Part shown: in pieces, positions 13,611-37,640 of the stretch | How the letters are laid out: the number at the start of each line of letters is the position of its first letter | Position numbering within the stretch: position 1 is the stretch's first letter | NCBI RefSeq assembly: GCF_006345805.1 | Contig: NC_043005.1 | Location: 97,588,001-97,652,000 of the forward strand | DNA length: 64,000 nt | Direction: 5' to 3' | DNA from: Octopus sinensis | Lineage: Eukaryota | Translations under genes and position numbers: made by a program | The notes under the pieces: model-generated | Databases searched by the model: none | Told to the model about the DNA's origin: nothing | Seen by the model: only the letters and a program-made list of their open reading frames with translations

Positions 13611-13714
13611 CTATGTCCATACACCAATATTTTGGATCTATCAGCAGGCCATTCACAGATAGCGATGAAAATATCTGGTTCAATTCCATTTTCAAAAAGA
13701 CGTACTTCTGAAAC
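13611..13714 (-). CDS. DCAF15: DCAF15 internal coding exon (equivalent to human exon 4): VSEVRLFENGIEPDIFIAICEWPADRSKILVYGH
   Basis: tctcttgttag|GTTTCA...CATAG|gtgagt; 104 nt = 34 codons + 2 nt; phase 0 start fits the previous exon. Matches human [35 protein letters not shown] (recalled). Confidence 0.93.
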
Positions 13715-14163
13715 CTAACAAGAGATAAAACAAACAAAGACTCAATCAATATCTAAATACGTAGTTATAGAGCCATTAGCTGAAGACAGCAAAAGACAAG
13801 GTACAATACCGTTCCTGTTTCAAATGGTTGGAGAGAATGTGGAAAAGTACATGGCAGAAACAAACAACAAATTTAATCTATGACAATATTGAGCTAAAGT
13901 GAATCTCGTAAGAGTTTAGCTTTCAGAAATGACACAAACATTAAGCAGAAATAGCAAAAATATTATAGAGCTGACTGACTGATTAGTTTGTCAAAAGCTG
14001 TAGAAACAAAAGACATTGGAAGTAATGTGTGTGTGTGTGTGTGTACAGAGATAATGCATGGTGCATAAAAGATGAAATGGAATTGCAAAGAGACTTGTAA
14101 AAGTGATAGAAAAGTACAGTGAAATTGCCATGGGCAGTGGAGAAGACAATGTTTCAAGCAGTC

Positions 14164-14429
14164 CATCATCATCGTCATCTAACGTCTGCTTTCCATGCTA
14201 GCATGGGTTGGACGATTTCGACAGAGGTCTGGCGAACCAGATGGCAGCACCAGGCCCCAATCTTGATCTGGCAGTTTCTACAGCTGGATGCCCTTCCTAA
14301 CGCCAACCACTCCAAGAGTGTAGTGGGTGCTTTTTACGTGCCACCGGCATGGGGGCCAGTCAGGCGGTACTGGCAATGACCTCGCTCGAATCTTTTTACA
14401 CATGCCACCGGCACAGGTGCCAGTAAGGT
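14164..14429 (-). mobile_element. RTE LINE 3' tail (subfamily 2)
   Basis: Reverse complement of the GTGGTTGGCGTTAGGAAGGGCATCCAGCTGTAGAAAC...CATGCTAGCATGGAAA..(GAT)n tail that follows RTE ORF2 at 47600-48059. Confidence 0.88.
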
Positions 14430-14548
14430 GACAAGGGTAAAATGGCTGTAAGGAAAGAGTCAAAACAACAGTTTTACACATTCTCTATCTGAGCAACTAG
14501 CAACAACTGAGACAAAGATATGAGCTTGCGTATGTAGACAGGAAAGTA

Positions 14549-14584
<36 letters not shown>

Positions 14585-14629
14585 AAAGAGGAGGGGAAGC
14601 AGGTAAGGTGGAGGGAAAAATTAAGGTGA

Positions 14630-15660
14630 GAGGAAGCTGAAGGTTAAAAATGGAATTACTGAAATAAGATGAGAGTAAAGGAACAGAAAGTGTTTATTTA
14701 AGCTTGTTAGTGGCACGGTTTTGAGTTTGAATATGAAATGTTTTCCCATTTCCTCGAGTATGTGGATCCATGATATGCAGAGATGCTGCACACTGATAAA
14801 TGGATAATGGAACAGTTCATTGTGTTGAAGTGGGAGGCCATAGTCGGCTTGGCATACATTGTAGTGTGCTTCAGATATGTTTGCAGTTGAAGCAATATAT
14901 GAGGGTGGAAATTGTTGTGACTTAGGTCCGGTGATGATGGTTGTGCTGTTAGTATAAGGATAGGTATTGCAAACATAGACAAGCACATTTAAAAGTATCT
15001 GGTTGTGTATGGCTGGGTACTTTGGAGCTTCTAGCTAGGAAGTTGTTGAAGTTGAAGGCAAAGAGAGATGGTGCAGGAACAAAGTAGATTTTTTTTTTTT
15101 GGGGGGGGGGGGTAGGATTTGAAAGTTGCAGATGATTGTGTGTTTTACTGAAATGGTAGATGAATGAAATCTGGTGTCTAGGTAGGTATGAAAGCTGTGA
15201 AATAGTTGATGGACTGCGCCTCACAGAGTGCAGGAGGCACAATTGATCAAGGGTACCTTTGATTTACATTGTTTTTCCCTTTTTCTTTTTCAAATTTGAA
15301 TTAATGCTGCTGAGATGGCAAAACAAGAGGAATTGAGAGAATGCTATGGCAGATTTAGTGCGCTTGGGGTGAGAGGAACAGCAGAATCAGCATGTCTGTG
15401 ATGGATAGGTCAATATTGTGAATGGTGCAGAAAGAGATGGAAAAGTTGATTAAACTAGCAAAGGTGTCAGATATGATGGAGATAAATTCCAGGGTGAGGT
15501 GAAAGGAGTTAATGGAAGAATGAACCCTGTTGAGCTGTTGTCTGATGAGGGTGGCAGCACTGACAAAGCTGTCAATATAATAACTATACAACTCTGGGAT
15601 AATCTTGGGAAGTGAGTAAAAATTTGCACTTCAATGTGGCCTAATTAGATCTATCTTGGT
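14630..15660 (-). mobile_element. Degenerate Penelope-like element (RT C-terminus plus GIY-YIG endonuclease)
   Basis: Minus frames give YYIDSFVSAATLIRQQLNRVHSSINSFH (YxDD-region-like) and AKPTMASHFN..IIHLSVCSIS..FIFKLKTVPLTSLN, typical of Penelope RT and GIY-YIG C-termini. Many stops and frameshifts. Confidence 0.72.
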
Positions 15661-15808
15661 TTCTATAGCAACCCTGCTATCTTGTTTGTAAAAATTCTCC
15701 AGAGAAAGAAAAGCAATTAAGGGTTGGGATGAGTTCAGTTAAGCAGAAGAGTTATTCAGTGCTGGATACAGATGGGGGGGGGGGGGCATAAGTCTAGTAA
15801 GTGCTTAA

Positions 15809-16000
15809 CCCTTTTGATATCAACCTCACTGAAACCACCTTTGGCTCTGTAGTACAAATGTCTTGTTTTCACAAGTTTTGAATTAAAATCTTCCACCAAA
15901 CCTTAGTCACAATTTATGTTCCTAACACTAGCTTAATGATAACCAAGTTATTTTACTAAATTCTTAGTTATATTTAAACAGAAATATGGTAATAAAAGGG
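15809..16000 (+). mobile_element. piggyBac-type MITE, family 1
   Basis: TTAA|CCCTTTTGATA...ATAAAAGGG|TTAA; homologous to 28831-29052 and 51495-51703. Confidence 0.88.
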
Positions 16001-16004
16001 TTAA

Positions 16005-16240
16005 GGACTGATAGGACATTGCTGTACATGACTGTGTGGAGTAGTTTAATGTCCTTGGGGAAAAGGTGCATCAACTGTGCAGGTAGAAAAGAAAAGCTGA
16101 AAAGTTCTGGGCATGGTAGATGTTTTCAATGTGTGTAGTTAAGGTGGCAACGAGGAGTGATAATATATTGCCAAAAATATGCAGAGGTATAAGTAGAGGA
16201 GGATATTTTGTTTGAGTAATTCTGGGAGTTGTATTTCTCT
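16005..16240 (-). mobile_element. Degenerate L2/CR1-like LINE ORF2 C-terminal fragment
   Basis: Minus translation LYLCIFLAIYYHSSLPP..VDAP resembles the L(S/C)LFYRYYHG..S-ELA..VP C-terminal motif; heavily decayed. Confidence 0.4.
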
Positions 16241-19199
16241 GGTACCTACATCAGAAACAAAAGTACAACTTTTCCTGACTAGACAGTATGGGATGTTACA
16301 TTTTGTATGTGCTGGATGGTATCATTTAAAATTCAGGTACTGATGTATATCTGTCATCCTCATCATTTGATGTCCAAGTTCCATTCTGACATAGGTTGGA
16401 CAGATCATTAAGTAATCATTAAGAGGGTAAAAGAGAAGTTTACTGAAAAGTTCCAACACATTCTGGATGGACTATAATATCTGTATTACATTAAAAGTCA
16501 GTCTGAATCTTGCTTGTAATGTTACCCAGCCAATCTGGTGCATAATGGGAAAAGATTATGTTGAGTTGGAGATGTCACAATTTGAGTCAATTCTTATTTG
16601 GAGCTAATACCTCTTAATGCCAACCATTCAACAGTGTACTGGGTGCATTTTATTATGGCACCCCTAACTATAGAGGACGCCTCGTTCCTTGAAAGACTGA
16701 AAATATTCTCACTACTTTACAATGTCTTCAAAAAGGTGAATAGAAGAGTGTGACAACAGAAGGAGAACTAGGGTAAGATGAGATAAGAGAGAGTTTGGTG
16801 GTAGAAATATAGTGTTAAGAGCAGAAGGGTAGTAGAAGAGGCTGTGATGGAAGACAAAGAGTGATGGCAAGTACATTTTGAGTGCTAAGGGGATTGAGTA
16901 AAAACATGAACAGTATCATAAGGGAGAGTGATGGAGTAATGGAAACAGAGTGATATATGTCAATAAGGAGAGAAAAAGATGGATAGCAAATAAGACAGGA
17001 ATAGACATCAATAAAGGAAAGCTAATGACAGTGTATTGAATACAGATATCCAGTGCTATGATTAGGAGAGATTAGATGAGAGTGTCAAAGGAGAGGGTAT
17101 TGGATGAAAAAGATCCAAATATAGATATATTATACACACTAACCCCTATCAATATAGACACTACTGTCTATTTTCTGTTATTTCAATTCACTCTAACTTG
17201 CTATCATAGATTAAACTTGACATCCAAGTGTCTTTGTGTGCATGAGACAAGATATATAAACATCCTTGTCCTAGATGAACTATTGAATTAGATAGGGTAT
17301 TCTGATGAGTTTAGCAAACAGGATTTATATAAAATATGTCTACACAAGAAATATAAGCACTTAATTAGTAGGAGTGCTTCTCTAAATCCCTTACTTTTAT
17401 TTCCCATAGCACAGGTTACCAAAGCTCATGGGCTTTGGCATTTAACATTAAATAAACAACAGAAATTTCAAACAGCAATATTAAGAGAATTTACTATCAT
17501 AAGCAAAGTCTTCAGAGATCTCCAGTTGCTTAACTAATTTGGGGGTTAAGAAATTTCATGGTAGTCATCTTTGACTAACTTCAATATGCTGTAATCAAAA
17601 TAGAGTGGTTTCTACTAAACTTCTAATAGATACCAATTAAAAATAAACTGACGCAGACTAACATCAAACAACACAACTAAAAGAAAAACAAAATCAATAT
17701 AAGAGAAAAATAAAATGAAGCAAATGACACACTAATATTGATTTCTTAGAATAAGCACACAACTACAAAAGTGTGTGTGTGTGTGAGGGAGGAGTATGGT
17801 TGATTATATCGACTCCAAGAGAACAGAGCAAAAACTAAACTGACCTTAGGATAAGGCACAATAATGAAAATAAGCATTAAAAAGAAATGAGGGGAAACAG
17901 AGAAAATACAGATACTCCAGTGTAGTTAAATTAGTTAACCTCTTAACAAATTAGAAGTGTCTATACAACAGGCCCCTAACCTAGTTTTCTGTATCATTAA
18001 GCATATAAGAAACAGATCTGAAGAAGACAGTCAGTATTTTAATGTAATCTAGAAGGCCTAGTACTAACTCTCTATTAGGTTCAACAGAAGCAAATAAAAC
18101 TGGCTAAGAATACATAATGAATCCTCAAACCCAAAAGCCATTCTCTTTCTCTAAGCTTCAGCATGGGCACTGCTACTGTTACCACTACTATTTTAAGGTT
18201 TTCTTTTCCATACTTGCATGGTTAGACCAGTGGTTTTCAAATGGGTCCATCTTAATAAAACAGGAATGAAAGAGATCCATAGCAAAAAAAAAAAAAAAAT
18301 GGTTGAGAACCCCTGGGTCAGACAAAATTCTTTGAGACAAAATTTTTTCTATGGTTCTTCTAATTACCAATCTTCACCTTCCCAAATCAAGGTGATATTT
18401 CTCCCAAGTCTGGACATTTCTTCATGAAAGATTGCAAACAAACAACATTGTATCATATTTGTTTACATTTAACACAATGTCAGGGTGAGACACATGGGCA
18501 TGTAATTTTTTTTTCTTTTAAGTTGCCATTAACCAAATTCACTGACATGTCTTTGGCCAGCTGAGGTTATAACAGTAAGAGATATTTGCCCAAGGTACCA
18601 CACAGTAGGACTGAACTCGAAACCACAAAGCAAAACTTCTCAGTTGCACAGCTATGCCTGCAATCATAAAGTTTTTGATATAACCCACCAAATCTATTAC
18701 AAAGGCTATGGTAGTATTTTGATAAAAAATGAAATGTTAAGCTAAGGTGACAGCCATAGGTTACTAGGGTTTAAGTCAACACAACAAAGAACCAAACCAA
18801 AGTACATTGGCAGGAAAGATGCATATGAATTTGGTAAAACACATCAATATGGTCATCATGTTAGCAAGGAAACCCAGAACTTAGCATGTGCTAAATACTA
18901 ACCAGCAACCATCAAGAACCAGATGCCTCTGCTAATTTTACCATTCCAATTGTCATTCAATAAATTCTTAAATTACGACAGACCTGTAAATCGTTTTGAT
19001 ACCAATCCACCCAAGACTGCCCCAGGTTCTGACAAAAACTTTTTATGATAACAAAAGGGTTAAGTCTTCAAATTTCATTCTGTCAATCATAATAAACCTC
19101 ACACATTTTTCATCTCTATATGCCATATCATGTCCAGCATATCTTGCTCCATCAATGGGGATGTTTAATGTTTTCTAATGAAGGTTCAACTCAGTGACG

Positions 19200-19440
19200 T
19201 GTAACACCAAAGCTATAATATTAACAAACTTAAAGAAAATATATGTACTACATGCTCATCTCTCAAAGACAGGTCTCAGTATATATCATATTTCTGGCTC
19301 CAAACCCTTCTACAGATACTACTGTCTCCACTCACAACTCATCTCTCGCTTCAATCTCTCACCACACTCTATTGCCTTCACTTTCAACTCTCTACATACG
19401 GTTACATTGCCAGTGCACAACTCTTGGTTTGAAATTCTGG
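19200..19440 (+). mobile_element. Degenerate L2/CR1-like LINE ORF2 C-terminal fragment
   Basis: Track ORF 19194-19523 contains PFYRYYCLHS..HTVTLP, resembling the same C-terminal motif. Confidence 0.4.
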
Positions 19441-20199
19441 GAACAATACTGAATATGACAGGCACCAGAAGCAGGCCAGAAGATACAATGGCTGAAACAT
19501 TGTGGCTATTACAACCAAAATGAGGACACTATTCTGAACATATCAGTGTCTAGCGGATCCTTACTATCGCACTTTTCAGTTCAGATGTCACCTGCCATGC
19601 CATGTGCACGGCTCCAACAACACTCCCATCAACTGTATTTGTTGCCCGTCACTTGTGATTTACTTATTTCCTTGTACATGGCTGCCATGTGTAGCCTTAT
19701 ATAGACCAACAGGAAGTAAAGTGATAATATGTTTGAATTAACAAACTGTAGATCAGATAATGCAATAAAAAGAAAGTAAAATTTTCAGTCTTGTAAAAAC
19801 TGGTTGAACAAGTGTGAGCAATTGTTTGGTTGAAGAAACATACTTTGAACATAAAAAATATCTACCCACTACTGTTACTTAAATCAATGACCCAAAAAAA
19901 AAAAAAAAAAAAAAAATCGGTTTAATAATTAAATGGGAGTAATCATGAGGCAGTAATGATTCTGGCCTTTGAATATTAATTTCCTTTTACAAGATAACAA
20001 GATCAACATTATGTGATCAGAAAATACAGTGATTTTAACCTTTTCTTTAGTGATAATGTTGAAATAAATTTATACTGTCAAGTGGTGAAAGAAGAAAACC
20101 TGACCAGAGTATAATCGGGCGTGTTGATATAAACAGTGATAACATGTGCCAACTCAGATAATTAGATCAACTGTGGATAAATCACACACAAATAAACTA

Positions 20200-21154
20200 A
20201 ATATAGTTTTTTATTATGTTAAACGTTTTTTAAAGCAGCTTCAGATAAAACAGTTGAAAATAGGGGCAACACTTTAAAAACAATACAATAAAATTACAAG
20301 AAATAAAACAGATTTTATCATATATAATAATTTATGTGGACATATCTGATTTAGAAAAACAAAACAAAAAAACTTCTAATTATACTTTGGTAACAATATC
20401 AGTTAAATTAACAATCAATAATTTTATACGGCCTATGATCCGCTTTCCTGGTATGTACTGGTAGAAGCTACCCTTAAATACAGTCACATATATATCAGCA
20501 GAAAGATTTCTATATGGGATGGTAATTTACATGGAAGTTATCCACAGGTTATACAAGTACTTATTTCAGGCAGTATTTTTATGGCTAGATGTTCTTCCTG
20601 TCTTAAACCAATTACTAATTTACAAATAAGGAAGCGTTTTTTTTTTCTACTACCTCTAAGAGTGCCCAAGTTATGCGATGTATTTTTTTACCGGAAATGT
20701 AAACATGACATCATTGTATTTTTCACTCAGATGATTTTATGTGAGAAGTGGAACTGATGACTTTCATGCATGTACACATATATGGAGGGCTTCCATGTAG
20801 TCTCTTTCAACCAATTTCACTCACAAGGAATTGGTTGACATGAAGCATTAATAGAAGACACTTGCCTGAGTTGTCAAGCAATGAAATTAATATAACATTA
20901 CATAATTTAAGATAAATATCTAAAATTGGTGCTTATAATATCATATACGAGTGGTGTATGAAAAGTTTTGAGCCTTGAAGTCTTGTACCATGTTTTGTTT
21001 TTTTCTGAGGCTCAAAACCCCTCATATATTAAAATACTAACTATTAATCTAGTTAATCACACACACACACACGCAGAGCCACTATTTGTAGTATCATCAT
21101 GAAAGTATTCCTCAGATGATAATAGTGTATTACTGACATAAAACAATCACTATT
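20200..21154 (+). repeat. Left arm of a 955-bp near-perfect inverted duplication
   Basis: Reverse complement of 21844-22798; I count 6 substitutions and no indels by eye. Confidence 0.97.
20948..21024. mobile_element. Small mariner-derived MITE inside the duplicated arm (mirror copy 21974-22050)
   Basis: TA|CGAGTGG..AAAAGTTTTGAGCCT ... AGGCTCAAAACCCCTCA|TA inverted ends. Confidence 0.6.
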
Positions 21155-21831
21155 TAAAGTTTGGTGATATTACTATGCCAATATATTAAATACCTTCCAA
21201 TAATTGCTTATTTTTGGCCATTCTTGCAGTCCTGTGAAAATTTTCATGCATATATATGACAACATATCATCTAACCAGGTGAGCAGGCGTATATTAGTAT
21301 TATTCTGGCCCAGTTTTATTGTTCCAGTTACCAATAATTTCAGGAGAAATAAATTTGAAAAAAATAACCTAGTCAATTGAAATTAGGATCAATATCAGAA
21401 GAAAAATCGGATAAAAATAGTTTGAGTAAGATTAATGTCCATTCAGCAACATTAGCTGAAGTGTCGTTAGACTCAAGTCTCTTTAACATTTCTTACAGTA
21501 CTGTGCTTGCTGTTGTCTATCTTCAGCTTCATAATCTCACAAATCAATACCAGATTATTTACTGCAAAGTATTCAAAGCATTTTCTTCAATATTGTCAAT
21601 ATTGCTGTTAGTAAAATTTTCAAAGTTATATTCAATTTGACATTGATCATCAGAACTCATGATAGTGTAAGTTATGTAGTTATAAAACAATAAATCCCAT
21701 GTTATGACAAAGATAATGGCTGTTCTCTCCAGTAAGGTGAGCTTTGACAAAGTTTGGCTGTTCACAATAAGAAGAGGTCATAATATATATGCATGTACGC
21801 ACACTTGAGCATGATTGTAGAATGGTAAAGG
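21155..21831 (-). pseudogene. Old piggyBac transposase N-terminal remnant forming the spacer of the inverted repeat
   Basis: ORF 21173-21376: LFFSNLFLLKLLVTGT..DDMLSYICMKIFTGLQEWPKISNYW, comparable to the PGBD motif LFF..LLDLIV.ETN..EMKAFIG..ILMG...P.I.DYW and to the 53974 ORF. Acidic N-terminus MSSDDQ..; terminus-like AAAGG|TTAC at 21827-21835. Confidence 0.6.
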
Positions 21832-21843
21832 TTACAAGAAAAT

Positions 21844-22798
21844 AATAGTGATTGTTTTATGTCAGTAATACACTATTATCATCTGAGGAATACTTTCATG
21901 ATGATACTACAAATGGTGGCTCTGCGTGTGTGTGTGTGTGATTAACTAGATTAATAGTTAGTATTTTAATATATGAGGGGTTTTGAGCCTCAGAAAAAAA
22001 CAAAACATGGTACAAGACTTCAAGGCTCAAAACTTTTCATACACCACTTGTATATGATATTATAAGCACCAATTTTAGATATTTATCTTAAATTATGTAA
22101 TGTTATATTAATTTCATTGCTTGACAACTCAGGCAAGTGTCTTCTATTAATGCTTCATGTCAACCAATTCCTTGTGAGTGAAATTGGTTGAAAGAGACTA
22201 CATGGAAGCCCTCCATATATGTGTACATGCATGAAAGTCATCAGTTCCACTTCTCACATAAAATCATCTGAGTGAAAAATACAATGATGTCATGTTTACA
22301 TTTCCGGTAAAAAAATACATCGCATAACTTGGGCACTCTTAGAGGTAGTAGAAAAAAAAAACGCTTCCTTATTTGTAAATTAGTAATTGGTTTAAGACAG
22401 GAAGAACATCTAGCCATAAAAATACTGCCTGAAATAAGTACTTGTATAACCTGTGGATAACTTCCATGTAAATTACCATCCCATATAGAAATCTTTCTGC
22501 TGATATATATGTGACTGTATTTAAGGGTAGCTTCTACCAGTACATGCCAGGAAAGCGGATCATAGGCCGTATAAAATTATTGATTGTTAATTTAACTGAT
22601 ATTGTTACCAAAGTAATATTAGAAGTTTTTTTGTTTTGTTTTTCTAAATCAGATATGTCCACATAAATTATTATATATGATAAAATCTGTTTTATTTCTT
22701 GTAATTTTATTGTATTGTTTTTAAAGTGTTGCCCCTATTTTCAACTGTTTTATCTGAAGCTGCTTTAAAAAAAGTTTAACATAATAAAAAACTATATT
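21844..22798 (-). repeat. Right arm of the 955-bp inverted duplication
   Basis: See left arm; paired coordinates sum to 42998 at both ends. Confidence 0.97.
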
Positions 22799-25700
22799 AA
22801 GGCTGTTTCTAACAGACTGCATTTTCAGTAGCCTCCTGGAAAGAAGTCCTAGTGGTCTGGAATCTTCCTTGCCACATTGGAAATAGTGAAAATAGTGATA
22901 TTGGGAAATGTGTACGTCAACAACTCTAGAAAGCTTGACTGTACAAGTATCTTTTTGTGCAATGCAGATCATGTATCTTGGAACTCGAGTGTGGTGCTTG
23001 TAGCAGTCAGGGCATCATGTACATCTCTTGATGATGAAATTCCACCACATCAGTAGTTTCCTCAGTCATCAAGACACAAGGTAGGTGTACCACAGGCAGG
23101 TGAGATTCCCTGGTTGCCCTCACAACTGTATCTTCTGTTGCTACTGCTCTTTAAGAAGAGCAATCAGCAAAGGATCCAGAATTCAAAGAGGATGGTCATC
23201 AATTGAATTCAATGGCCAACTGCAAGCAAGCAAGTAGTAAGCTATATATATATAAATTATCCATATTTATGGATGATATAAGGCTAGTAATGCATGTATA
23301 TGTCTTAATTTTTCGTACATTTGTATTAGAACACACAGCCATATTGAGAATGGATATTACTGAATTTGTTGACCCACTAACTGCTGAAACATAACTGTCC
23401 CTGAATATTTCCCTAAGACATGTTGAAGTATGTATCTACTGAGCAGCTGATACGATGGAAGTGAAATATCAAAAGAGGGTGGGAAAATCATTTGTGCAAC
23501 AGCAATCAAATAAATGTATATGGGTTGTAGTGAATTCCTTCCAAAGCAAAGAGTACTTTGTGAGGGCAAATAGGAAATGGGTTAGTAAGTTAATGGCTCT
23601 AAATGCCCATCCAAACAGGAACTTTTATACTTTTTTAAAGAATTTTAAGAAGATGAAATGTACTATCACTATAATTTAAATCAATAATGCTATTAAAAAA
23701 ATATTTTGGTTCAACAATTTTAAGGCACCTGGACAAGTGTCTTTTATAGACAGAAATTAATAAAATGGAAATGTGCATACGTGTCCAATGTCCTTGTTCT
23801 GACATGTTGGTCATTCATACATTTGTTTGCAATCTTCTATAAAGACATTTTCAGCCATTGTACTATTTGTTTTCCAAGGATTAAAGGGCTGAGATGTCTG
23901 GCAATATGAGGTTCATGATCTGCTTACTTAGACTAGACAAGATCTGCTTATCTAGACTAAAATGAGTTATGTAAGCTCTATGCATATTGTGCTCCACCCA
24001 CGTTACAGTGATTTATCAGTCACTGAGCCAAATCATTTTTCATCATGCACTCTGCCATCTCCTCCTCCACACAGCCTACCCAACTATGTCATTTCTCTTT
24101 CTCTCTCATTTGTCAACTGCATCATCATTACTAACCTGCCACTCTCCACCACCCTGTTTACAAGGTAGCATGGCCAATTCTCCCGAGCATATTGCCAACA
24201 GATCACTCCATTTTTCTCCAACTCATGGTTCAGTGGTCATCCATCCTTCAACCCCACCCAATTTTCATAGCTGTTTCCCCATCTCCTGCTCCCAATAGAA
24301 TCTTGTGAACCACCTACCATCCACTTCTATCCACTTGAGCACCTCCTACCAATCATTTATCTTTTCTTTCTCTCCTTCTCCTACTAAATGTGAGTAGCCA
24401 TGGCAGACCCTCTACACAAATGTGCTATGACAGCTGTCCCATCTTCTCTCATATCTTAACCTCTTGTTCTCCAGCATAAAGCCAATCCCCACCTCTCTTG
24501 GGCTTCTTACTCTTGTGAGCTGCATGGTGATCTCAGCAGTGCTGGTGGCATGAAAAGCACATAGTACATGCTGTTAAGTGTTAGGAAGGACATCCAACCA
24601 TAGGAAAACCATGCCAGAGGAGTTATTGGGACACAATGCAATCCTTGGAGCCATTGGATCCTGTTAAACCACCCACCCGTGGTTGAAAACAAATGAAAGA
24701 TGGTGACAAGAAGAGCATCTAGCTGTAAGAAATCTGCCTAAATGAATTTTATCTTACTCTGACAAGTATAGAAAAATGGATGCTATGATGAGTAGTAGTA
24801 GTAGTAATTCATATTATTTTTTCAGTTGGCAGTAATTGTCTCCCAAATGAAATGTATCACTGACTTACAATATTTTGGTTCAACAATTTTAAGCTAGTAG
24901 AATATAAACTAAACAGTTACATAAAACCAATACTTGTTTTCAGATAGATATGTTCCTTAACAAGTCACCTATTGTAATCTGAATAGAAAAATTAAAAGAA
25001 ATAATTCCTATATCGGAGTCCACACCCAGTTGTTGAATGTTGGATGATGAATTGCTTTATAGAAAAGTTCAATGACATTTTAAAACTCGAACAAATAAGA
25101 ATAATTTTCTAAGCACAGATTAAAATAAGGAAATATAATAGCAGTCAAAAGTATATACTTTCAAGATATTATAGCTATTGACAATCAGTTAAGAAGAACT
25201 TTCAAAGATTTATTATTATTCCACATCAACAGGAACTGAATACAAGTTTATTACATGCATATTTCAATATAGTAGTTTTTGATATACTTTAAAGAAAAAT
25301 CAGTTTTAATGATAATATTAATTTATATTTTCAGCTTTTCCAACAGCCATTGGTGGTGTTGTTCTGAATCACTTCAGTAGCCACCATGTTTATCTTTATG
25401 AAGGCAAACTTGAAGTAGAGTACATAATACTAGATCTACATGTGGGGACTGATAGATATACAGTCAGAAAAAAAAAATCATTTCAAGGTAATCTTCAAAG
25501 TCCTTTTTATGTTAGTGTTGATAAATTGAATACCTGAAGAGCTATAAATGTAAATTGCAATTTAACATGGAGATTTTTTTTTTCTGTATTATAAAAACAG
25601 ATATTTGTTCAACTTCAGATGTTTCATATTTCCAACTCTTTGAGTGGCAGGATTAAAAGCTTTACAGTATTCTTGTTTTTTTCCTCTTAAATGTGTTCAA

Positions 25701-25959
25701 ATGTTGCTAGGATTGACTTATCTTTGAACCCTAGGAGGAGAGTTAAAATTAGTAACACTAATTATACTGAGGCAGATCAATAGACAATAGCCCTGTTCAA
25801 TAAAAATCAGTTTCATGCTAAGTAAAAAAAAACAAAAAAAACTTTGCATCATGAAATCAGGAACGGTTTACTTGAATACATTCATAAAACTGTTTCTAAT
25901 AAGCTATCATTTCTATTTCTGCCTAATCTCCTAAGCTTTAAGTAAATGAGAAGCAATAA

Positions 25960-27330
25960 ATTGGTATAGACAAAACCATGTATTCAGTATGAACCAGAAA
26001 AGCTGTAGCAAAGAGTTAAATGAAAGTATCAGACATGAAAGAGAGATTGTTGATGCAAAAGGAATTAAGAGGTTTCGGTATGACATTTGGTGACATGAAA
26101 AAGAGCACAATGTGAAACTGGGTGGTGAGAAGAAATAATAGAGGAAAAAGTGGTTACAACTCAAAATAATACACAAGTTGATAAAATGCTTAGTAAACAA
26201 AGTCAAAGAATCCCCAATTTGAAAGTATAAGAGCGTGACAGTGTTCAAGCTCACTGGTTGAAGAAATTCAGTTCACTGCATGAAAGAATTGCCTCGCAAC
26301 AAGATAACATCTCGAATAATAAAGAACTGACAAAAAGGAAATTTCTGTCCAATATTATGTTCCACTTTTGTGGGAATTACAAACTAGAATGATGTCAGAA
26401 AGTATGCATTCCTTTCTGGAGGAACAGCAAATGCTAACTGATGAATATTAATGTTGTTGTAAAAATAGCAGAATGACCGGAGATCAACTGCAGATTGACA
26501 ATTTAAAGCTGAAAGATTGTTAGGGGTAACATACCAATTTTAACAGTGGCATGGACAGGTTATATGGATAAAAGTATATAAAAGACTGAATTAACAGGAC
26601 AGGTACTTGGAGAAGTTCAGATACAAAGAGGGATCTAAGGAATAGCATGTCACTTTTATTGCGTGAAATGTGTACGATACTGATGATATTGTGACAGACA
26701 GCAGTTCAACATGAATGAGAAAACAATTCAATCTTTTGATTGTGAATGATCTTAAACTGTTTGGGTAAGTAAACAGATTCTTTAGTTAAAAACTGTTCAT
26801 TCATGGGAATAGAATTCAGGATACCAAAAAGTGGTATAATTAAACTGAAGAAGAAAGATTGTGCCAATACATGAGACAATGCTATATTGTGATTAAGTAA
26901 AGAAGGAGAAAAGAGGAGAATGGATAAGTACTTAAGAATACTAAAAGCTGGTAAAATCAAGGAGATTGAAACGGAAGAATTATTTGGAAAAGAATTTCAA
27001 AGAAGAATAAAATTGGTCAAAATTAAATGGAAAACAAAAATATAACATTAGCAATAAATCAGAAACACATAGGTAATATTAGGATATGGTATGGAGCAGG
27101 AATACTAAAATGGAATAAAAACACCAGAAGTGAGAAAGACCTGGTTTACACAGGGAAAATGGAAGAGTTAAACAACTTCTCTGAATGCAAATAAATAAAC
27201 TGCAATGAGCATGAGGGGTTTTCTGGAGAGGCCTAAGAAGATAGATATGCTATACAGAGAAGGTGATAGTTGTAAGCTGTCCATAAGCAGAGAATTGGCA
27301 GAGGATACTGAGACACTGATAAAATTGCAG
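25960..27330 (+). mobile_element. Degenerate R4/Dong-clade non-LTR retrotransposon RT fragment
   Basis: Decayed motifs RQNHVF..NQK, RIPN..RDSVQAHWLKKFSSLHERIA, CCKNSRMTGDQLQID, EVQIQRG, DLKLFGK, YGAGILKW match the R4/Dong RT pattern. Confidence 0.7.
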
Positions 27331-28830
27331 AATTCATTGGCATTTGAAACAAATGTTGTGGCTTGAAAAGGAAATTGCATTCTTTGAATAGTGAAATTAT
27401 TGTTGAGACTACAATAGCAAAACACCATAATTTATCTCTGCTGTTTTAATCTTCTGGCATCTAATCAGTAAGGCCTAACATCTCTAAGACTGATCTACCA
27501 AGTATCATTCACTCATATTACAAGACCATACCTAACCAAACACCAAACCTGTCTATTATAAGCCTTTGTTACTTCCTGAATTCATTGCACTCACAATTTC
27601 TCCTTAATTTGTGTAATATACTCCAAGGTTTATTACATTCATCTGTTTCTTCAACAATCATTGTAGACTTTCTACATTGTTTATTTTTCATTATTATGTA
27701 GCATCATGTTTTCATATGAAAATCTGCTTTTAATATGAAAAGAAACACTTCTAACTCTAACTGAGGAAGTTGTTTTCACAATTTTATCCCTGCAATCTAA
27801 ATTCTAACCATAATGCAATCACTAGCATCACCTTTAGCACAAATTATGTCACCTAGATAATTATATCTAGTAACTATGTATAGCTGCAATCCATTCAAGA
27901 AGTTCATATTCTTTACTGTATAAGCAGCTCAAGTTAAAACATTTTATTAGAAGCATCATTTTCAGTGGTTGGCTATTTAATAATTTGCCACTAATCTAAC
28001 CAGTACACAAAAATTCTCAACTAATATTCAAAAACTTTAGATTAAGAGCTGATTCTAGTATTCTTATCAATAATGGGTACTCTAATATCTATTTGATATA
28101 AATAAGTAGTTAGTATTATTCATCTTTACAACTTCCACACCATAATTATCCCTAAAGTAAATCTTAAAATATACAGTCTAGACTACAAGAAGGGAACTGA
28201 AAATAATTGAGTACTTTTTGGCACAAGTTTGACTAGAGTTGGCTCGAACTGTGAAAATGTTTCAAGTATGTACCATTAGAAAGTGTTAATATCAGAAATT
28301 ACCCACTACTTTTAATGACTTCAAGGTTCACCTAATAGAGATGTTTTTAATCAATAGTGAAAGATGTGTGTATATATGTGTAATCTATAGAAATACAAGT
28401 GTATCCAAAGAACACAAGAAATGATTTAGATATCGTATTTTTCTAGCAATCTCCTTCATTTAATTCCTTTTCAAGTTTAAATTCTCTCAGGTTATTTCAA
28501 GATTCTACTCCATGTTTGCTCTACCAAACCTAATGGCACTTTTCCATCTATGCTTATTCTACCATCAAGCTGTAACTTCACCGTTTTCTAATACATACAG
28601 TGACTGCTATTTCTGATGACTAAACCAAATACAGTTCAAACATACTCCTTTCCAGTATCCCTCAAGTGATGTGGTGACATGGTATAGCAACAATATTTTA
28701 TTTTTGTTTCTCTATGCTTGCTTTGGGTTGATTTTGTTTTCCCAACTTTCTGAGTCAGGCATTGATGGGAGTGGTTTTCAATTGACAACCACTACCTTAG
28801 AAAATATCTGCCCTTGGCACAAATGATGAA

Positions 28831-29052
28831 CCCTTTTGATACCAACCTGACCAAAACCACCTCTGGCTCTGCAGTACAAATATCTTACTTTCATAAATAT
28901 TGAATTAAAATCTTCCAGCAAACCTTAGTCACAATTTATGTTCCCGACACTAGCTTAATGATAACTAAGTTCTTTTACTAAATTCTTTGTTATATTTAAA
29001 ATTAATTGTATGAAACACAGAGCATCTCAAAATAAATATGGTAATGAAAAGG
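28831..29052 (+). mobile_element. piggyBac-type MITE, family 1
   Basis: TGAA|CCCTTTTGATACC...GAAAAGG|TTAA; homologous to 15809-16000. Confidence 0.85.
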
Positions 29053-30159
29053 TTAAGAACCATACTACATTCTGTATATGTTCTGAATATTGTTGGGGTT
29101 GGGTTAGGATCCTATTTTTCTGGAATCAATAAAACAACTCAACAAAGAAACTCCTACATAAAGGCTCAGCTTGTTTGAAATACCGGCCAAACTTCCCACA
29201 AACCTACAATCTTGAAAAAAGTGAAGGATGCATCAGATAATGTAGTCCCAGATATTTTTAAATACTTAAATATCTGAATAAAAGATGATATGGTCATATC
29301 AAGAGTGCCTCAGATTACAGAGCATCTGACTTAGATCTGAAACAACAACTATCAGTTATACGTTGGAAATAGATGCCTTCCTCTGTAAAAGGTAATCCTG
29401 TACCTAATCCAGAAAAATCATTTTAACAGAGCTAGGTCTTTATGGTGATTTAATTCTGAAACTAATCATTATTGATTTTAAAATTTAATCACCATATTTA
29501 ATTTTAAAACCCACCATTATTGTAAACAATTTTTAAACACCATTATTCTAAATTACTTGTGTGTTAACAGTGTTTCTTTAATGACTATAATGTACTATTG
29601 AACACACACACTATATATATATATATATATATATATACAAAAAAAAAAGTGTTGGCAAAAACTTCTGTATGCTCTATAGTACATTATATTAATATCTCAT
29701 TGTCAATAGAATTTGTTGCAATAATTAAAATAATATTTAATATGAAAATAGATTGATACAATAGTTATTAATGGCTGCATTATTATTAAAGGATGTATTA
29801 TAGATTGATTGGATTCAGTTCTTGTTGACAAGACCCCACTAGAGAAACTTGTTTTTAATGGAAAGCTATTTTCAACAAAATCGTCCACATTCATTACTCA
29901 TGCAAATTATGCTAATCAGTGAATACAATAAAGCATTTCTTTCATTCACTTGTCAGAATGATGCTGATTCTAAAAGTGTGCCAGTTTCTCTAATTCTGTC
30001 CATCTGTTATTGACACACATTTACGACCACCCGTCTTTTCTATCAAAACACTGAATTTTGTCATTCCAGTATCTCATTTAATCACGTTGCATCGAAATTT
30101 TACAGTTCACATTTTCTTACATAGCCTTAGGCGCAACAATTCCTTTTCTCTTTCTCTCT

Positions 30160-30194
<35 letters not shown>

Positions 30195-30789
30195 ACATTG
30201 CTTTGTTGCAAAAGACAATGGAGGAGTAATGTGATGTACTAATGATGCATGTATTAGAACCAGGCAGAACCATCATTGAGAAAACATGCCATATGTAATA
30301 ATGTATGAAAACCTGATCCAAATCATTCTTTATAAAAAATATGTTCGTATTTAAATTAAAATCTTGATCAAAATTTTATATGAAACATGAAATGATAATA
30401 TGAAGTTTTAGATGGTCGAGACCAACATAATAAACCAATATATAAAGTTACAAATATTTTACTAAAACACCAACAAAGCCTCAAGTATATTGAAATTAAA
30501 TAGATGTCTACTCGAAAGAAAAATAATTACAAAAAAAATTAATAGAGATCATGAGAAAAATAAAGAAAGACTGCAGTCTCTTGTTAACCAAGTGAATGTG
30601 GTGATTAGAAAAAATATAATCAGAGCAAGTGGAGATACAAAGAGAGAGAAAATCAAACAGTGTCTAGGGATATCTGTAAAGGTGTTAAAAACCTGAGGTT
30701 GGTTGAAAGAATCTATCAGGAACAAAAGCAATCATGATACCAATGAGATAGTTCTTCAAAAACAAACATCTATATTTTGGCTTGTTCTG

Positions 30790-31270
30790 ATAATTGATAG
30801 GGTACTAGATTGCAGCTATAAAGCCTCAAGTCAGCACTGAGTGACCAGTCCTAGGTTCCTAGTCGTACCACATTTCCTAAACTGAGGACCATATTGCACA
30901 CTCTCAAATGCAGTCACGAACCATAAGGGAATGCGGTGTGACAGTCTATTCTTATAAACCAGTAGATTCTGGGAGTAGTCACAGCAGAAGCAGCAAGGTA
31001 GACTTAGTTGTAGTGCAACAGTTGATGTTCCTCTGCCCTTATTGATGGTGGGGTGCATCTCAGCACAGTGGTTGATACCAGGGAAATTACTGAAGTTATT
31101 GCTATTGCTGTACATATTTTTTATGTTTGATGAGTGGGAAAGTCAATGTTTTAGGATGCTGCTCCAGGCTGTTGAACACATGTCTGGGTGTTTGGAGGTA
31201 GTTTTTCATGTAGGATGATGGGGATAGAAACTTATTGTAATAACAGACTGTGCTCTTCACATGCCTAGGT
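30790..31270 (-). mobile_element. Degenerate L2/CR1-like LINE 3' fragment
   Basis: Minus frame HPDMCSTAWSSILKH (cf. RPHLEYCS.VWS) then GINHCAEMHP..GRGT. Confidence 0.45.
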
Positions 31271-31276
31271 GCCTTT

Positions 31277-31487
31277 TCATTATTGATTTTAAATTTTAGC
31301 ACAAGGTCAGCCATTTTGGGGTAGGGGTTAAGTTGATCACATTGCCCCCCCCCCAGTAATCAACTGATATTTATTTCATCAACCCTGAAAGGACGAAAGT
31401 GAACCTTAGTAGATTTTGAACTCAGAATGTAAGGATGGATGAAATGCCACTCAGCATTTTGCCCAGCATGCTAACGATTCTACCATC
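31277..31487 (-). mobile_element. Older SINE family B variant
   Basis: Reverse complement carries the GAATCGTTAGCATGCTGGGCAAAATGC head and the TTTCATCAACCCTGAAAGG domain. Confidence 0.7.
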
Positions 31488-32039
31488 CTATGGGTGTGGC
31501 CTGTGTCCAGGCAGTGGTGATGTTTAGTGTGCCATTTTGTGTTCTGTAGTTTATTGTGGAAAAACTGGAGGCACTTGTAGGGCTGGCATAATCTTTGATG
31601 GATCTAATATATTGTTTGAAAAAAAAATCATGTATAAAAAAAGGTTAATATTTGATTTATGATTAGCAATACATTCAATAAGGAATTTCAAATTCCTAAT
31701 AAGAGAGCATAAACACTTTATAGGTCCCTCGCTATCTCCTTTACCTGGTGCTTATAACAAATTCAGAATTGGTTGCCAAGGAGCTCTAAATGCAGATAAT
31801 TTAGTTCTGATCACAACACTGGAAGTTTAAAAGATGGGGAAAAAATTGGAATCTAAAAGTTTGAAAATGAACGTAGCAAAAGGAGCATAAACCATGTAAT
31901 GAGATCTCAAGTAAATTTATATAAAATCATGACAAAGAACATGCTAGTAAAAATGGTAGTTATAGCATTAGAGTATTGGAGAATGGACAAGGATTAAAAG
32001 AAAGCTAATGATGTGATATTGCAATCCTTTTTTTTCTTT

Positions 32040-32290
32040 TTCAAGAAACCAGCCAGCTACCTAATCACCTATCAATCTTGTAGGCACACCAACCAAACTG
32101 ACTACATTCTCACCAGAAAACAGGACAGACAGTTGCTTGTGAATGGAAAATCCTTCCTGAGGAAAGAATGTACTACCCAACATAGGTAGCAGCAGGTGAC
32201 TTTAGTCTCAGAGCTAAAAGGACACAGAAATGCAAACCAGTTTGGAAAAGGAAATTGTGGAAGCTTAGATTCAATGTACATTCAGTTCCA
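32040..32290 (+). mobile_element. RTE LINE endonuclease-region fragment
   Basis: Nucleotide homology to 43880-44100 (TTCAAGAAACCAGCCAG..GACTACATTCTCACCAGAA). Confidence 0.7.
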
Positions 32291-32545
32291 GCCAGACCAA
32301 GGATTCATCAGCATTAGGTATTCCAGAATGCAAGACTATCAGAGAGAATCAAAATGTGGGCAATAAGTGAGTATGTAGCTGGATTATGGTACACTACACT
32401 TAGTGATTTTGAAAAGAATGAGGTTCTTTCTAACATGGACCCCAAGTTGGATCAGCCCAACAGAGGGCCCAGCTATCCTCATTGACAGCAATTAGGGATA
32501 GGAAGGCAGGGAAAGCCTCAGGTCCATCAGGAATCACCACTGAGA

Positions 32546-32897
32546 TCATCATCATCATCGTTTAGCATCCGTTTTCCATGCTAGCATGGGTTGGACGGTT
32601 CAACTGGGGTCTGTGAAGCTGGAAGGCTTCATCAGGCCTAGTCAGATCTGGCAGTGTTTCTACGACTGGATGCCCTTCCCAACGCCAACCACTCCATGAG
32701 TGTAGTGGGTGCTTTTTACGTGCCACCCGCACAGGTGCCAGACAGAGCTGGCAAACGGCCACGAACGGATGGTGCTTTTTATGTACCACCGGCACGGGGG
32801 CCAGGCGAGGCTGGCAACGGACACGAACGGATGGTGCTTTTTACGTGCCACCGGCACGAGGCCAGTCGGGGCGGCGCTGGCAACGGTCACGAACGAG
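32546..32897 (-). mobile_element. RTE LINE 3' tail with three ~60-bp GC-rich tandem units
   Basis: (CAT)n tail plus the conserved tail; GGTGCTTTTTA(C/T)GT(G/A)CCACC unit repeated three times at 32705-32895. Confidence 0.88.
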
Positions 32898-33009
32898 ATG
32901 CTTAAAATATTACATGGCATAGGATAAAGCCTTATCACTTATATAGTTAATCAAGATGCACAGGAAGGATTAATATGCAATGACTGACATAGAGTCATTA
33001 TAATCAACT

Positions 33010-33440
33010 TTACAAGGGTAAAGGAGATATCTTAGAGTTATCAAATTGCCGGACAGAATGGAGAAAGTTCAGAGAGCTATTACCTCTGTTGGTAACAACA
33101 GATCTTTCTCTCAGAGTAAAAAGCAAATTGCATGATGTTTGTGTATGAACAGCAATGCTACATGACACTGAAATGTGGGGTGTGAAGACAGAGAACATGC
33201 AAAGAATAGAAAGGAATGAAGCTTGTATGCTCTGTTGGATGTGCAATGTTAGTGTACACATACAACAAAGTGCAAATATGTTAAAATCGGGCATAGTAAG
33301 AATCAGATGTAGTGAGCAAGAGAGATGACTGTACTGGTATGGCCATGTGATACATATGGAGGAAAACAACTGTGAAAAGAAGACCCAATTGCTAAATGCA
33401 GATGGAACCTGTGGAAGAGGGAGGCCCAGGAAGAGAGGAA
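33010..33440 (+). mobile_element. Older RTE ORF2 C-terminal fragment
   Basis: Homologous to 47100-47480; encodes ..ERNEACML.WMCNV..YWYGHVIHMEENNCEKK..GTCGRGRPRK. Confidence 0.8.
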
Positions 33441-35057: not shown

Positions 35058-35458
35058 TCTTTATATATATATAAAGCTGAAGTTGTCTGTGTATGGCAGG
35101 TTTGATAGCCTTCAACTAACACTATCTCCTCTGAGACCCTGCGGCACAAGTTGACCAAAATTGAGAGTATGATAGAAGGCTTGCTCTTCCTTCCGTAGAA
35201 TATAAAATTCAAATCGGACCATGTTAACACCAAAAATTATTTACATCAAGAAGGTGGGGTTATTTTTTCTATGAAAATCCATATTTTTTACGATTTTTTG
35301 ACTGCTGTGTTGTCATTTTTCAGTGTATTTCAACCAGAAAAGTGTTCACTTAAAGAGAATAACAAGCTACATAATGGAATTTTTGAAAAGTAAAAATTTT
35401 GCAATTCTAAAGGGTCGAAAAGAAAACAAGCCTGAGCAACGCTGAGCTATACTGCTAG
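35058..35458 (+). mobile_element. Non-autonomous Helitron
   Basis: A|TCTTTATATATATATAAAG 5' end; decayed subterminal hairpin GCCTGAGCAACGCTGAGC (35430-35447); CTAG|T 3' end; no TSD. Confidence 0.8.
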
Positions 35459-36588: not shown

Positions 36589-36732
36589 TTGGTTGGCGTT
36601 AGGAAGGGCATCCAGCTGTAGAAACACTGCCAGATCAGACTGGAGCCTGGTGCAGCCTCCTGGCTTCCCAGACCTCGGTTGAACCATCCAACCCATGCTA
36701 GCATGGAAAACGGACGTTAAATGATGATGATG
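36589..36732 (+). mobile_element. RTE LINE 3' tail (subfamily 1)
   Basis: High identity to 47905-48059 and 57200-57357; (GAT)n tail. Confidence 0.9.
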
Positions 36733-37363: not shown

Positions 37364-37640
37364 CTTACAAAGCCTTGTGAGTGGATTTGGTAGACGGAAA
37401 CTGAAAGAAGCCCGTCATAAATATATATATATGTATGTGTGTCTGTGTTTGTCTCCCCAACATCGCTTGACAACCGATGCTGGTGTGTTTACATCCCCGT
37501 AACCTAGTGGTTCGGCAAAAGGGACTGATAGAATAAATACTAGGCTTACAAAGAATAAGTCCTGGGGCCGATTTCTTCAACTAAAGGCGGTGCTCCAGCA
37601 TGGCCACAGTCAAATGACTGAAACAAGTAAAAGAGTAAAG
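37364..37640 (+). mobile_element. 5'-truncated SINE family A; older copies follow at ~37680-38030 and ~38370-38560
   Basis: Reverse complement matches 2538-2830. Confidence 0.85.

What the first reader, a model, noticed from the sequence alone, without database searches (positions are those of the whole stretch)
20200..22798. 955-bp, ~99.4% identical inverted duplication of ordinary intron DNA
Seen: arms 20200-21154 and 21844-22798 are equal in length with about 6 substitutions; even homopolymer and (CA)n lengths match; the spacer is 689 bp. The arms contain old decayed repeats (SINE-A remnant ~20780-20870, mariner MITE 20948-21024) and I see no TSD, so this looks like a recent inverted copy of host DNA rather than transposon TIRs. 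Inference: the DCAF15 pre-mRNA would fold into a ~1-kb near-perfect duplex, a strong substrate for ADAR hyper-editing (extensive in coleoid cephalopods) or Dicer. The DNA could also flip the spacer by recombination. An assembly artefact is possible, since the divergence is comparable to allelic differences.
Basis: partly seen in the sequence, partly recalled or inferred. Interest (0 to 1): 0.7.

Follow-up and report, generated by a model that had tools for sequence, protein, structure and literature searches.

The report
Fold-back inverted duplication in octopus intron
A 950-bp stretch of ordinary intron DNA in the octopus DCAF15 gene was copied backwards and inserted 689 bp away, a known kind of DNA repair or replication accident; a closely related octopus genome still has the unaltered site, and the copy gives the gene's primary transcript a roughly 1-kb hairpin whose effect is untested.

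Summary
Arms 20200-21154 and 21844-22798 are 955 bp long and align without gaps. They differ at 6 positions (5 events) and are separated by a 689-bp spacer. This is the only long near-perfect inverted repeat in the window.

The window comes from the Octopus vulgaris/sinensis group. The repeat lies in a 25,136-nt GT-AG intron of DCAF15 on the minus strand.

The decisive result is a comparison with the O. vulgaris chromosome assembly (L002). L002 is collinear with the window and differs by 0.62% substitutions. It has the left arm and the spacer but no right arm. At that place it carries 15 bp that the window lacks. So the right arm is a derived, inverted copy of sequence 689 bp away.

The new copy joins its surroundings through 2-nt (AA) and 3-nt (ATT) microhomologies. 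It has no target-site duplication and no terminal motifs, and I found no other copies in the 176 kb available. This is the signature of fold-back priming or template switching (MMBIR/FoSTeS-type), not of a transposon.

"Recent" needs qualifying: the arms differ from each other as much as the two assemblies do.

The RNA hairpin is predicted in silico (-1747 kcal/mol). Editing, small RNAs and spacer flipping remain untested. An assembly artefact is unlikely but cannot be excluded without reads.

The parts
20200..21154 (.). Left arm: the original (donor) copy, in its ancestral position
   Evidence: It is contiguous with its left flank and with the spacer in O. vulgaris L002 (window 1-21845 = L002 102081-80254). 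The L002 arm is also 955 bp and aligns without gaps.
21155..21843 (.). Single-copy spacer (689 bp), in ancestral orientation: the presumed fold-back loop
   Evidence: Collinear with L002. No Pfam family above threshold: only a sub-threshold PF13843 hit, E=0.038, which BLASTP against the window's real piggyBac fragment did not confirm. No Rfam match.
21844..22798 (.). Right arm: the derived inverted copy, inserted in place of 15 bp
   Evidence: Absent from L002 at this site. It matches L002's single arm copy (80946-81900) in the opposite orientation at 99.69%.
21844..21845 (.). Inner junction microhomology AA
   Evidence: L002 reads GAAAAT-AA-GCTGTGG... and the window reads GAAAAT-AA-TAGTGATTG....
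22796..22798 (.). Outer junction microhomology ATT
   Evidence: L002 reads ...GTTGGA-ATT-AAGGCTG and the window reads ...CTAT-ATT-AAGGCTG. The chance of >=2 nt at one random junction and >=3 nt at the other in local sequence is about 2%.
13715..38850 (-). DCAF15 intron (25,136 nt, GT-AG) that contains the whole repeat
   Evidence: Flanking exons were mapped by tblastn with octopod DCAF15 proteins. The splice sites were read directly.
38851..38997 (-). DCAF15 exon upstream of the intron
   Evidence: Pfam PF14939 DCAF15_WD40, E=3.7e-15. The coding part is 100% identical to O. vulgaris P0004, and 98% to O. bimaculoides P0115 in an alignment that runs 3 codons into the intron.
13613..13714 (-). 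DCAF15 exon downstream of the intron
   Evidence: 100% identity over 34 aa to the O. bimaculoides and Argonauta hians DCAF15 proteins.
20770..20883 (.). Old SINE-like fragment inside the arm (mirrored at 22115-22228)
   Evidence: About 73% identical copies at 2773-2885 and 6397-6507, and in L002.

Best explanation
This is a lineage-specific, templated inverted insertion, that is, a small fold-back inverted duplication. SHOWN: the ancestral locus was flank - arm - spacer - 15 bp - flank, and O. vulgaris still has it. In the window's lineage the 15 bp (GCTGTGGCAGTTGGA) were replaced by 950 new bases. These bases are the reverse complement of the sequence lying 689 to 1644 bp to the left on the same chromosome. 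INFERRED MECHANISM: a 3' end stopped at ...GAAAATAA, either at a double-strand break or at a stalled fork. It folded back and paired through 2 nt (AA:TT) with position 21153-21154 of its own strand or of the lagging-strand template. It was then extended for about 950 nt, copying the arm backwards. It let go and rejoined the original track 15 bp further on through a 3-nt microhomology (ATT). The loop of the fold-back became the 689-bp spacer. INFERRED CONSEQUENCE: the result is neutral intron DNA. Because DCAF15 is transcribed through both arms, the primary transcript should contain a 955-bp near-perfect hairpin. That is the kind of substrate that ADAR enzymes hyper-edit. The DNA itself is a potential site of spacer inversion or deletion.
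For: Empty site: window 1-21845 aligns collinearly to L002 102081-80254 and window 22796 onward to L002 80238 onward. The right arm matches only L002's single arm copy, in reverse orientation. The junction sequences show the 15-bp replacement and the AA and ATT microhomologies; the chance of both is about 2%. There is no TSD. No further copy of the arm or spacer exists in 64 kb of window plus 112 kb of L002, apart from a 110-bp SINE piece. Internal positive control: in the same comparison, a real transposon insertion at 53705-54779 shows a TTAA TSD, 12-bp TIRs and a second copy. The right arm shows none of these. The arms differ at 6 sites, so they are not a trivially duplicated read. With L002 as reference, 4 events are private to the left arm and 1 to the right arm, and 2 differences from L002 are shared by both arms. 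The window has no N, and collinearity continues for 20 kb and 40 kb on the two sides. Intron context. Hairpin: MFE -1747 kcal/mol against about -505 for shuffles, 949 of 955 in-register pairs, longest perfect helix 496 bp. The literature describes the same anatomy for fold-back inverted duplications with a single-copy spacer (PMC3907307) and for fold-back templated inverted insertions at breaks (PMC11724301).
Against: No reads or independent assembly of the window's own source were available, so the filled allele rests on one assembly. Exact and homology look-ups of ORFs across the arms, spacer and junctions, and two metagenome scans, found nothing. No outgroup sequence for the site was obtainable: the O. 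bimaculoides gene range was too long to fetch and the Argonauta introns do not align. Polarity therefore rests on parsimony. Arm-arm divergence (0.63%) is as large as the inter-assembly divergence (0.62%) and lies within the reported O. vulgaris heterozygosity of 1.22%. That pattern is also what a haplotype mix-up would give. The known experimentally documented fold-back insertions at breaks are much shorter (about 5-34 bp).
Confidence: 0.72

Rival explanations
1. Assembly artefact: the animal has a single arm, and the right arm was created by a chimeric long read or a haplotype mix-up, then polished with reads from both alleles.
For: The arms differ only by substitutions, at 0.63%. This is the level of allelic differences (heterozygosity 1.22% in O. 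vulgaris) and equals the window-L002 divergence. The right arm is closer to the O. vulgaris sequence (3 differences) than the left arm is (7). No independent data set confirmed either junction.
Against: Palindromic-read artefacts put the two copies back to back or at contig ends and gaps. Here there is a 689-bp spacer and no N. There are two separate novel junctions, each with microhomology, a 15-bp loss at the acceptor site, and perfect collinearity with L002 for tens of kb on both sides. A single strand-switch chimera cannot return to the original track. No combination of an inversion haplotype and a normal haplotype yields the spacer-to-inverted-arm junction.
Confidence: 0.17
2. The inverted repeat is ancestral, and O. 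vulgaris lost the right arm by deletion, with 15 bp of filler left behind.
For: Long inverted repeats are deletion-prone, and no outgroup was available to polarise the change.
Against: It requires an exact excision of one arm plus the insertion of an unrelated 15-mer. The window-side junctions, by contrast, read as simple microhomology joins of a copy whose template lies next door. With arms only 0.6% apart, the repeat cannot be much older than the split anyway.
Confidence: 0.05
3. Transposon: either a fold-back or long-TIR element spanning 20200-22798, or two insertions of the same young element in opposite orientation.
For: The arms contain repeat debris (a SINE piece). A weak 3-bp TAA can be read at both outer ends.
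Against: At the empty site only ONE arm is missing; the left arm and spacer are present and contiguous with the flank in L002. There is no TSD: the TAA is part of the ATT/AA microhomology, and 15 bp of the target are lost. There are no terminal motifs and no other copies in 176 kb. The spacer has no significant transposase match.
Confidence: 0.02
4. Retrocopy: a piece of intron RNA was reverse-transcribed and inserted nearby.
For: The donor is transcribed as part of the DCAF15 intron.
Against: There is no poly(A) tail and no TSD, and the copy ends at microhomologies. The 689-bp donor-acceptor distance points to a local DNA template.
Confidence: 0.02

Closest known systems
Fold-back inverted duplications with a single-copy spacer (human constitutional inv-dup; Hermetz et al. 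2014, PMC3907307)
   Same: An inverted and a non-inverted copy are separated by a normal-copy spacer that corresponds to the fold-back loop. Short homology lies at the spacer/inverted-copy boundary. The proposed origin is intrastrand pairing of a broken end.
   Different: The human cases are kilobase-to-megabase terminal events that pass through a dicentric chromosome and end in deletions or translocations. Here synthesis stopped after 950 nt and the end rejoined 15 bp from where it left, so the result is a small interstitial insertion.
Local fold-back templated inverted insertions at double-strand breaks (yeast; Yu et al. 2024, PMC11724301)
   Same: An inverted copy of sequence next to the break is primed by microhomology on one side and captured by end joining on the other, leaving a small deletion at the break.
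   Different: The documented yeast events are mostly 5-34 bp with templates immediately next to the break. This copy is about 950 bp with a 689-nt loop.
Replication-based template switching (FoSTeS / MMBIR)
   Same: Two template switches with 2-3-nt microhomology, an inverted segment copied from within about 1.6 kb, and a return to the original template close to the point of departure. This comparison rests on established knowledge, not on a test here.
   Different: The sequence alone cannot distinguish this from break-induced fold-back. There is no triplication or larger complex rearrangement.
dsRNA from young inverted repeats as ADAR substrates (Zhang et al. 2023, PMC9989829; includes O. bimaculoides data)
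   Same: Two nearby, barely diverged inverted copies inside one transcript form the long duplex that A-to-I editing mainly targets across metazoans.
   Different: Those substrates are usually pairs of transposon copies. This one is unique host sequence duplicated in place. No RNA data were examined here.
Hairpin-RNA (hpRNA) loci of Drosophila and proto-miRNA genes of plants born by inverted duplication (own knowledge)
   Same: An inverted duplication creates a long, near-perfect hairpin that could feed Dicer.
   Different: Those loci usually copy a target gene's exons and have their own transcription. This one copies anonymous intron DNA, has no identified target, and no small RNAs are known for it.

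Membership tests
Fold-back / template-switch inverted duplication | The new copy is an inverted duplicate of nearby sequence on the same chromosome | tested here: met
   The right arm is the reverse complement of 20200-21154, 689 bp away, at 99.4%.
Fold-back / template-switch inverted duplication | A single-copy spacer lies between the arms, in ancestral orientation | tested here: met
   Spacer 21155-21843 is collinear with O. vulgaris L002.
Fold-back / template-switch inverted duplication | Microhomology at the breakpoint junctions, with no TSD | tested here: met
   AA and ATT at the two junctions, and 15 bp of the target lost. Joint chance is about 2%.
Fold-back / template-switch inverted duplication | An unrearranged allele exists in a relative | tested here: met
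   L002 (O. vulgaris GCA_951406725.2) has the arm, the spacer and the 15 bp, but no second arm.
Fold-back / template-switch inverted duplication | Both junctions are supported by reads in the source individual | not testable with these tools
   No reads were available. ORF look-ups and metagenome scans found no independent copy.
Fold-back or long-TIR transposon | The whole element (both arms and the middle) is absent from an empty site | tested here: not met
   Only the right arm is absent in L002.
Fold-back or long-TIR transposon | Target-site duplication | tested here: not met
   There is a 15-bp target deletion instead. By contrast, the TTAA TSD of the piggyBac-type insertion at 53705-54779 is clear.
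Fold-back or long-TIR transposon | Multi-copy family | tested here: inconclusive
   There are no other copies in the 64-kb window or the 112-kb L002. The whole genome was not searchable.
Palindromic-read assembly artefact | The copies abut, or lie at a contig end or gap, and are identical | tested here: not met
   689-bp spacer, no N, 6 differences, and collinear flanks of 20 and 40 kb.
Palindromic-read assembly artefact | Read depth over the arms corresponds to one copy, and no spanning reads exist | not testable with these tools
   No read data were available.
ADAR-edited / Dicer-processed intronic hairpin | Both arms lie in one transcript and form a long duplex | tested here: met
   Both arms lie in one DCAF15 intron. 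The predicted hairpin has 949 of 955 pairs and an MFE of -1747 kcal/mol. Transcription itself is inferred from the gene model.
ADAR-edited / Dicer-processed intronic hairpin | Clustered A-to-G mismatches in RNA, or phased small RNAs | not testable with these tools
   No RNA data were available.

The most novel reading that the evidence does not exclude
The duplication is a newborn functional hairpin locus. In neurons, where octopus ADAR activity is high, the 955-bp intronic duplex would be heavily edited or diced. It would then measurably change DCAF15 splicing or expression, or produce endo-siRNAs, in animals that carry the filled allele compared with those that carry the empty allele. That would make it a natural presence/absence experiment on long dsRNA in a cephalopod.
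Probability: 0.07. Interest if true: 0.6.

Novelty: new member of a known kind. Interest (0 to 1): 0.3.

Why it matters
This is a cleanly resolved natural example of a mid-sized (about 1 kb) fold-back templated insertion. Donor, acceptor, both junctions and the unrearranged allele are all visible. Its size lies between the 5-34-bp events seen at experimental breaks and the large inverted duplications of human disease. It also shows how unique, non-transposon sequence can become a long dsRNA-forming hairpin inside a gene. If the filled and empty alleles both occur in populations of the O. vulgaris/sinensis complex, they would form a natural pair for testing what cephalopod ADAR and Dicer do with a near-perfect 1-kb intronic duplex. 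In itself the event is most likely a neutral intronic mutation.

Tried and rejected
1. Exact look-ups of 20 ORFs from the arms, spacer, junctions and the DCAF15 exon in the 15-billion protein collection found none. In the first batch, eight of the ten entries started with GTG/TTG and were translated without M. I repeated those with M and they were still absent.

2. Homology searches with the right-junction ORF and the spacer ORF gave no hits. No Logan or other contig across the site could therefore be fetched.

3. Two metagenome scans, with a right-flank 33-mer and a spacer-end 26-mer, gave no hits.

4. The O. bimaculoides DCAF15 locus could not serve as outgroup. Isoform X2 is not on record, and the isoform X1 gene range is 130 kb, so no DNA was returned.

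5. The Argonauta hians locus L001 and the ENA contig L003 have alignable exons but not introns.

6. A piggyBac remnant in the spacer was suggested by a PF13843 hit at E=0.038. BLASTP against the window's real piggyBac fragment did not confirm it, and other spacer and arm frames gave nothing. I treat it as chance.

7. The 'mariner MITE' in the arm has no other copy and only a weak internal inverted repeat. It is not confirmed.

8. I considered Helitron, retrocopy and TA/TAA-TSD readings of the termini. The end sequences rule them out.

9. Rfam found no RNA family in 19000-24000.

Full report
**1. The observation**

The repeat finder reports one inverted pair in 19000-24000. A base-by-base comparison fixes the arms at 20200-21154 and 21844-22798.
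- Each arm is 955 bp and the alignment has no gaps.
- The arms differ at 6 positions: 20225, 20381-82 (an adjacent TA/AT swap), 20452, 20949 and 21083. That is 5 events and 99.37% identity.
- The spacer is 689 bp.
- Identity drops to background immediately outside and inside the arms.
- All homopolymer and (CA)n lengths match.
- This is the only long near-perfect inverted repeat in the 64 kb. The others are 160-170-nt SINE pairs at 77-79%.

**2. Context**

An ORF at 38.8-39.0 kb on the minus strand hits Pfam DCAF15_WD40 (E=3.7e-15). A representative search with that exon and a homologue search returned three useful proteins:
- DCAF15 of Argonauta hians (P0003)
- DCAF15 of Octopus bimaculoides (P0115)
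- a truncated O. vulgaris gene model (P0004; names)

tblastn places three consecutive DCAF15 exons on the minus strand, at 46242-46114, 38997-38851 and 13714-13613. Read directly, the intron between the last two runs from 38850 to 13715. It is 25,136 nt long, starts with GT and ends with AG. The repeat lies wholly inside it, 16.1 kb from the 5' splice site and 6.5 kb from the 3' splice site. No exon lies between the arms.

**3. The decisive comparison**

The O. vulgaris gene model allowed its locus to be fetched: L002, GCA_951406725.2, OX597823.1. The window and L002 are collinear over the whole 64 kb. They differ by about 0.62% substitutions, small indels and a few insertions. The window therefore comes from the O. 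vulgaris/O. sinensis group, but I cannot say which species. At the repeat:
- Window 1-21845 (left flank, left arm, spacer) aligns as one block to L002 102081-80254.
- Window 22796 onward aligns to L002 80238 onward.
- The right arm matches only L002 80946-81900. That is L002's single copy of the arm, and the match is in reverse orientation.

At the junction, L002 reads GAAAAT-AA-GCTGTGGCAGTTGGA-ATT-AAGGCTG. The window reads GAAAAT-AA-TAGTGATTG...CTAT-ATT-AAGGCTG. So O. vulgaris has the unrearranged site. In the window, 15 bp are replaced by 950 new bases, and the copy overlaps the old sequence by AA on one side and ATT on the other.

**4. What this excludes**

- *A transposon spanning both arms.* This would be absent as a whole from an empty site. 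Here only one arm is missing.
- *A transposon insertion of any kind.* This would normally carry a target-site duplication. Here 15 bp of the target are lost.
- *A multi-copy family.* Apart from the 110-bp SINE piece, the arm and spacer have no other copy in the window or in the 112 kb of L002.
- *A coding or RNA element.* No significant protein family and no Rfam family was found.

The same window-L002 comparison contains a real transposon insertion that works as a control. Window 53705-54779 is a 1,075-bp piggyBac-type element with a TTAA duplication, 12-bp terminal inverted repeats, a transposase fragment (PF13843, E=4.4e-10) and a 94% copy elsewhere in L002. L002 shows its empty TTAA site. 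The right arm has none of these marks. Retrocopy and Helitron readings fail on the end sequences: there is no poly(A), no TC...CTRR termini and no TSD.

**5. How it most likely arose**

Shown: the donor, the acceptor, the inverted orientation, the 15-bp loss, and the 2-nt and 3-nt microhomologies. The chance of such microhomologies at two random junctions in the local AT-rich sequence is about 2%.

Inferred:
1. A 3' end terminating at ...GAAAATAA arose from a break or a stalled fork.
2. It paired through AA with TT at 21153-21154, either on its own strand or on the lagging-strand template. That left a 689-nt loop.
3. It was extended for about 950 nt along the arm.
4. It then disengaged and rejoined through ATT, 15 bp beyond the point of departure.

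This is the anatomy described for fold-back inverted duplications with a single-copy spacer (PMC3907307). It is also the anatomy of fold-back templated inverted insertions at breaks (PMC11724301), and it equally fits FoSTeS/MMBIR-type double template switching. The sequence cannot tell the break-based and fork-based versions apart.

**6. Age**

I used L002 as the reference:
- The left arm carries 4 private events: 20225, 20381-82, 20452 and 21083.
- The right arm carries 1 private event: 22049.
- Both arms share 2 differences from L002: 20364 and 20677.

The 4:1 asymmetry is not significant (p=0.375). Arm-arm divergence (0.63%; 95% interval about 0.17-1.2% for 5 events) equals the window-L002 substitution divergence (0.62%). 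It lies below the 1.22% heterozygosity reported for O. vulgaris. O. sinensis and O. vulgaris are dated 2.5 My apart (PMC10700109).

So 'recent' holds only loosely. There are two possibilities. Either the event is about as old as the coalescence of these two haplotypes. Or the copy was templated from the homologous chromosome and was born already carrying allelic differences, in which case it could be very young. I cannot separate these two.

**7. Artefact?**

The allelic level of arm divergence, and the lack of any independent data set, keep this possibility open. Several points argue against it:
- Palindromic-read artefacts place the copies back to back or at contig ends.
- A single chimeric switch cannot return to the original track.
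- The window has no N.
- There are two distinct novel junctions with microhomology.
- The flanks are collinear with an independently built ONT assembly for 20 and 40 kb.

I put the artefact at about 0.17. I put the alternative polarity (ancestral repeat, with loss of one arm plus 15-bp filler in O. vulgaris) at about 0.05.

**8. Consequences (inferred, not shown)**

The minus-strand RNA of 20200-22798 folds at -1747 kcal/mol, against about -505 for shuffles. It forms 949 of 955 in-register pairs, and the longest perfect helix is 496 bp. Across metazoans, including octopus data, A-to-I editing mainly targets dsRNA formed by young, barely diverged repeats (PMC9989829). Hyper-editing of this intronic hairpin is therefore a reasonable expectation. 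Dicer processing and effects on DCAF15 splicing are more speculative.

At the DNA level, recombination between the arms could flip the spacer, but in the window it is still in the ancestral orientation. The most likely overall status is a neutral intronic structural variant.

**9. Verdict**

The functional inferences remain untested. This is a new example of a known kind of mutation, and it is of moderate interest mainly as a clean natural case and as a possible presence/absence test of long dsRNA handling in cephalopods.

Noticed in passing
window 53705-54779: A 1,075-bp piggyBac-type non-autonomous element is present in the window but absent from the orthologous O. vulgaris site, which has an empty TTAA. 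It has a TTAA target duplication, 12-bp terminal inverted repeats (CCCTTTCGTTAC / GTAACGAAAGGG) and a transposase N-terminal fragment (PF13843, E=4.4e-10). A 94% copy lies at L002 30550-31615. This indicates recent piggyBac-type mobility in this lineage.
   Followed up: yes
window 43155-45280: A 2,126-bp segment is present in the window and absent from O. vulgaris L002, whose empty site reads CCCCAAAAAGGCCTGGAATC. Its nature was not determined. Parts of it match dispersed repeats at 66-76%.
   Followed up: partly
L002 75253-75817 and 69946-70047 (opposite window ~27165 and ~32284): Segments of 565 bp and 102 bp are present in O. vulgaris and absent from the window. They have no other copy in either sequence.
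   Followed up: partly
window 13612-13710 (minus strand); O. vulgaris protein CAI9729531.1 (P0004): The annotated O. vulgaris DCAF15 model is only 155 aa. It reads the third exon seen here in a shifted frame, so it looks like a truncated or mis-framed gene model. In the window this exon is intact in the DCAF15 frame and 100% identical to O. bimaculoides.
   Followed up: partly
window 10343-10833: A decayed mariner/Mos1-type transposase fragment (PF17906 HTH_48, E=9.8e-10). The ORF at 60834-61124 reads like a mariner C-terminus but had no Pfam hit.
   Followed up: partly
L001 (Argonauta hians) and L003 (ENA ERZ21867824 ctg123255l): The DCAF15 intron that is 25 kb in the window is about 6 kb in A. 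hians and only about 0.5 kb in the unidentified ENA assembly. Intron size in this gene therefore varies about 50-fold among these relatives.
   Followed up: no
window 21176-21382 (minus strand): A sub-threshold Pfam hit to piggyBac transposase (PF13843, E=0.038, profile positions 8-63) lies in the spacer. BLASTP against the window's real piggyBac fragment did not confirm it. It is probably chance or an extremely decayed remnant.
   Followed up: yes
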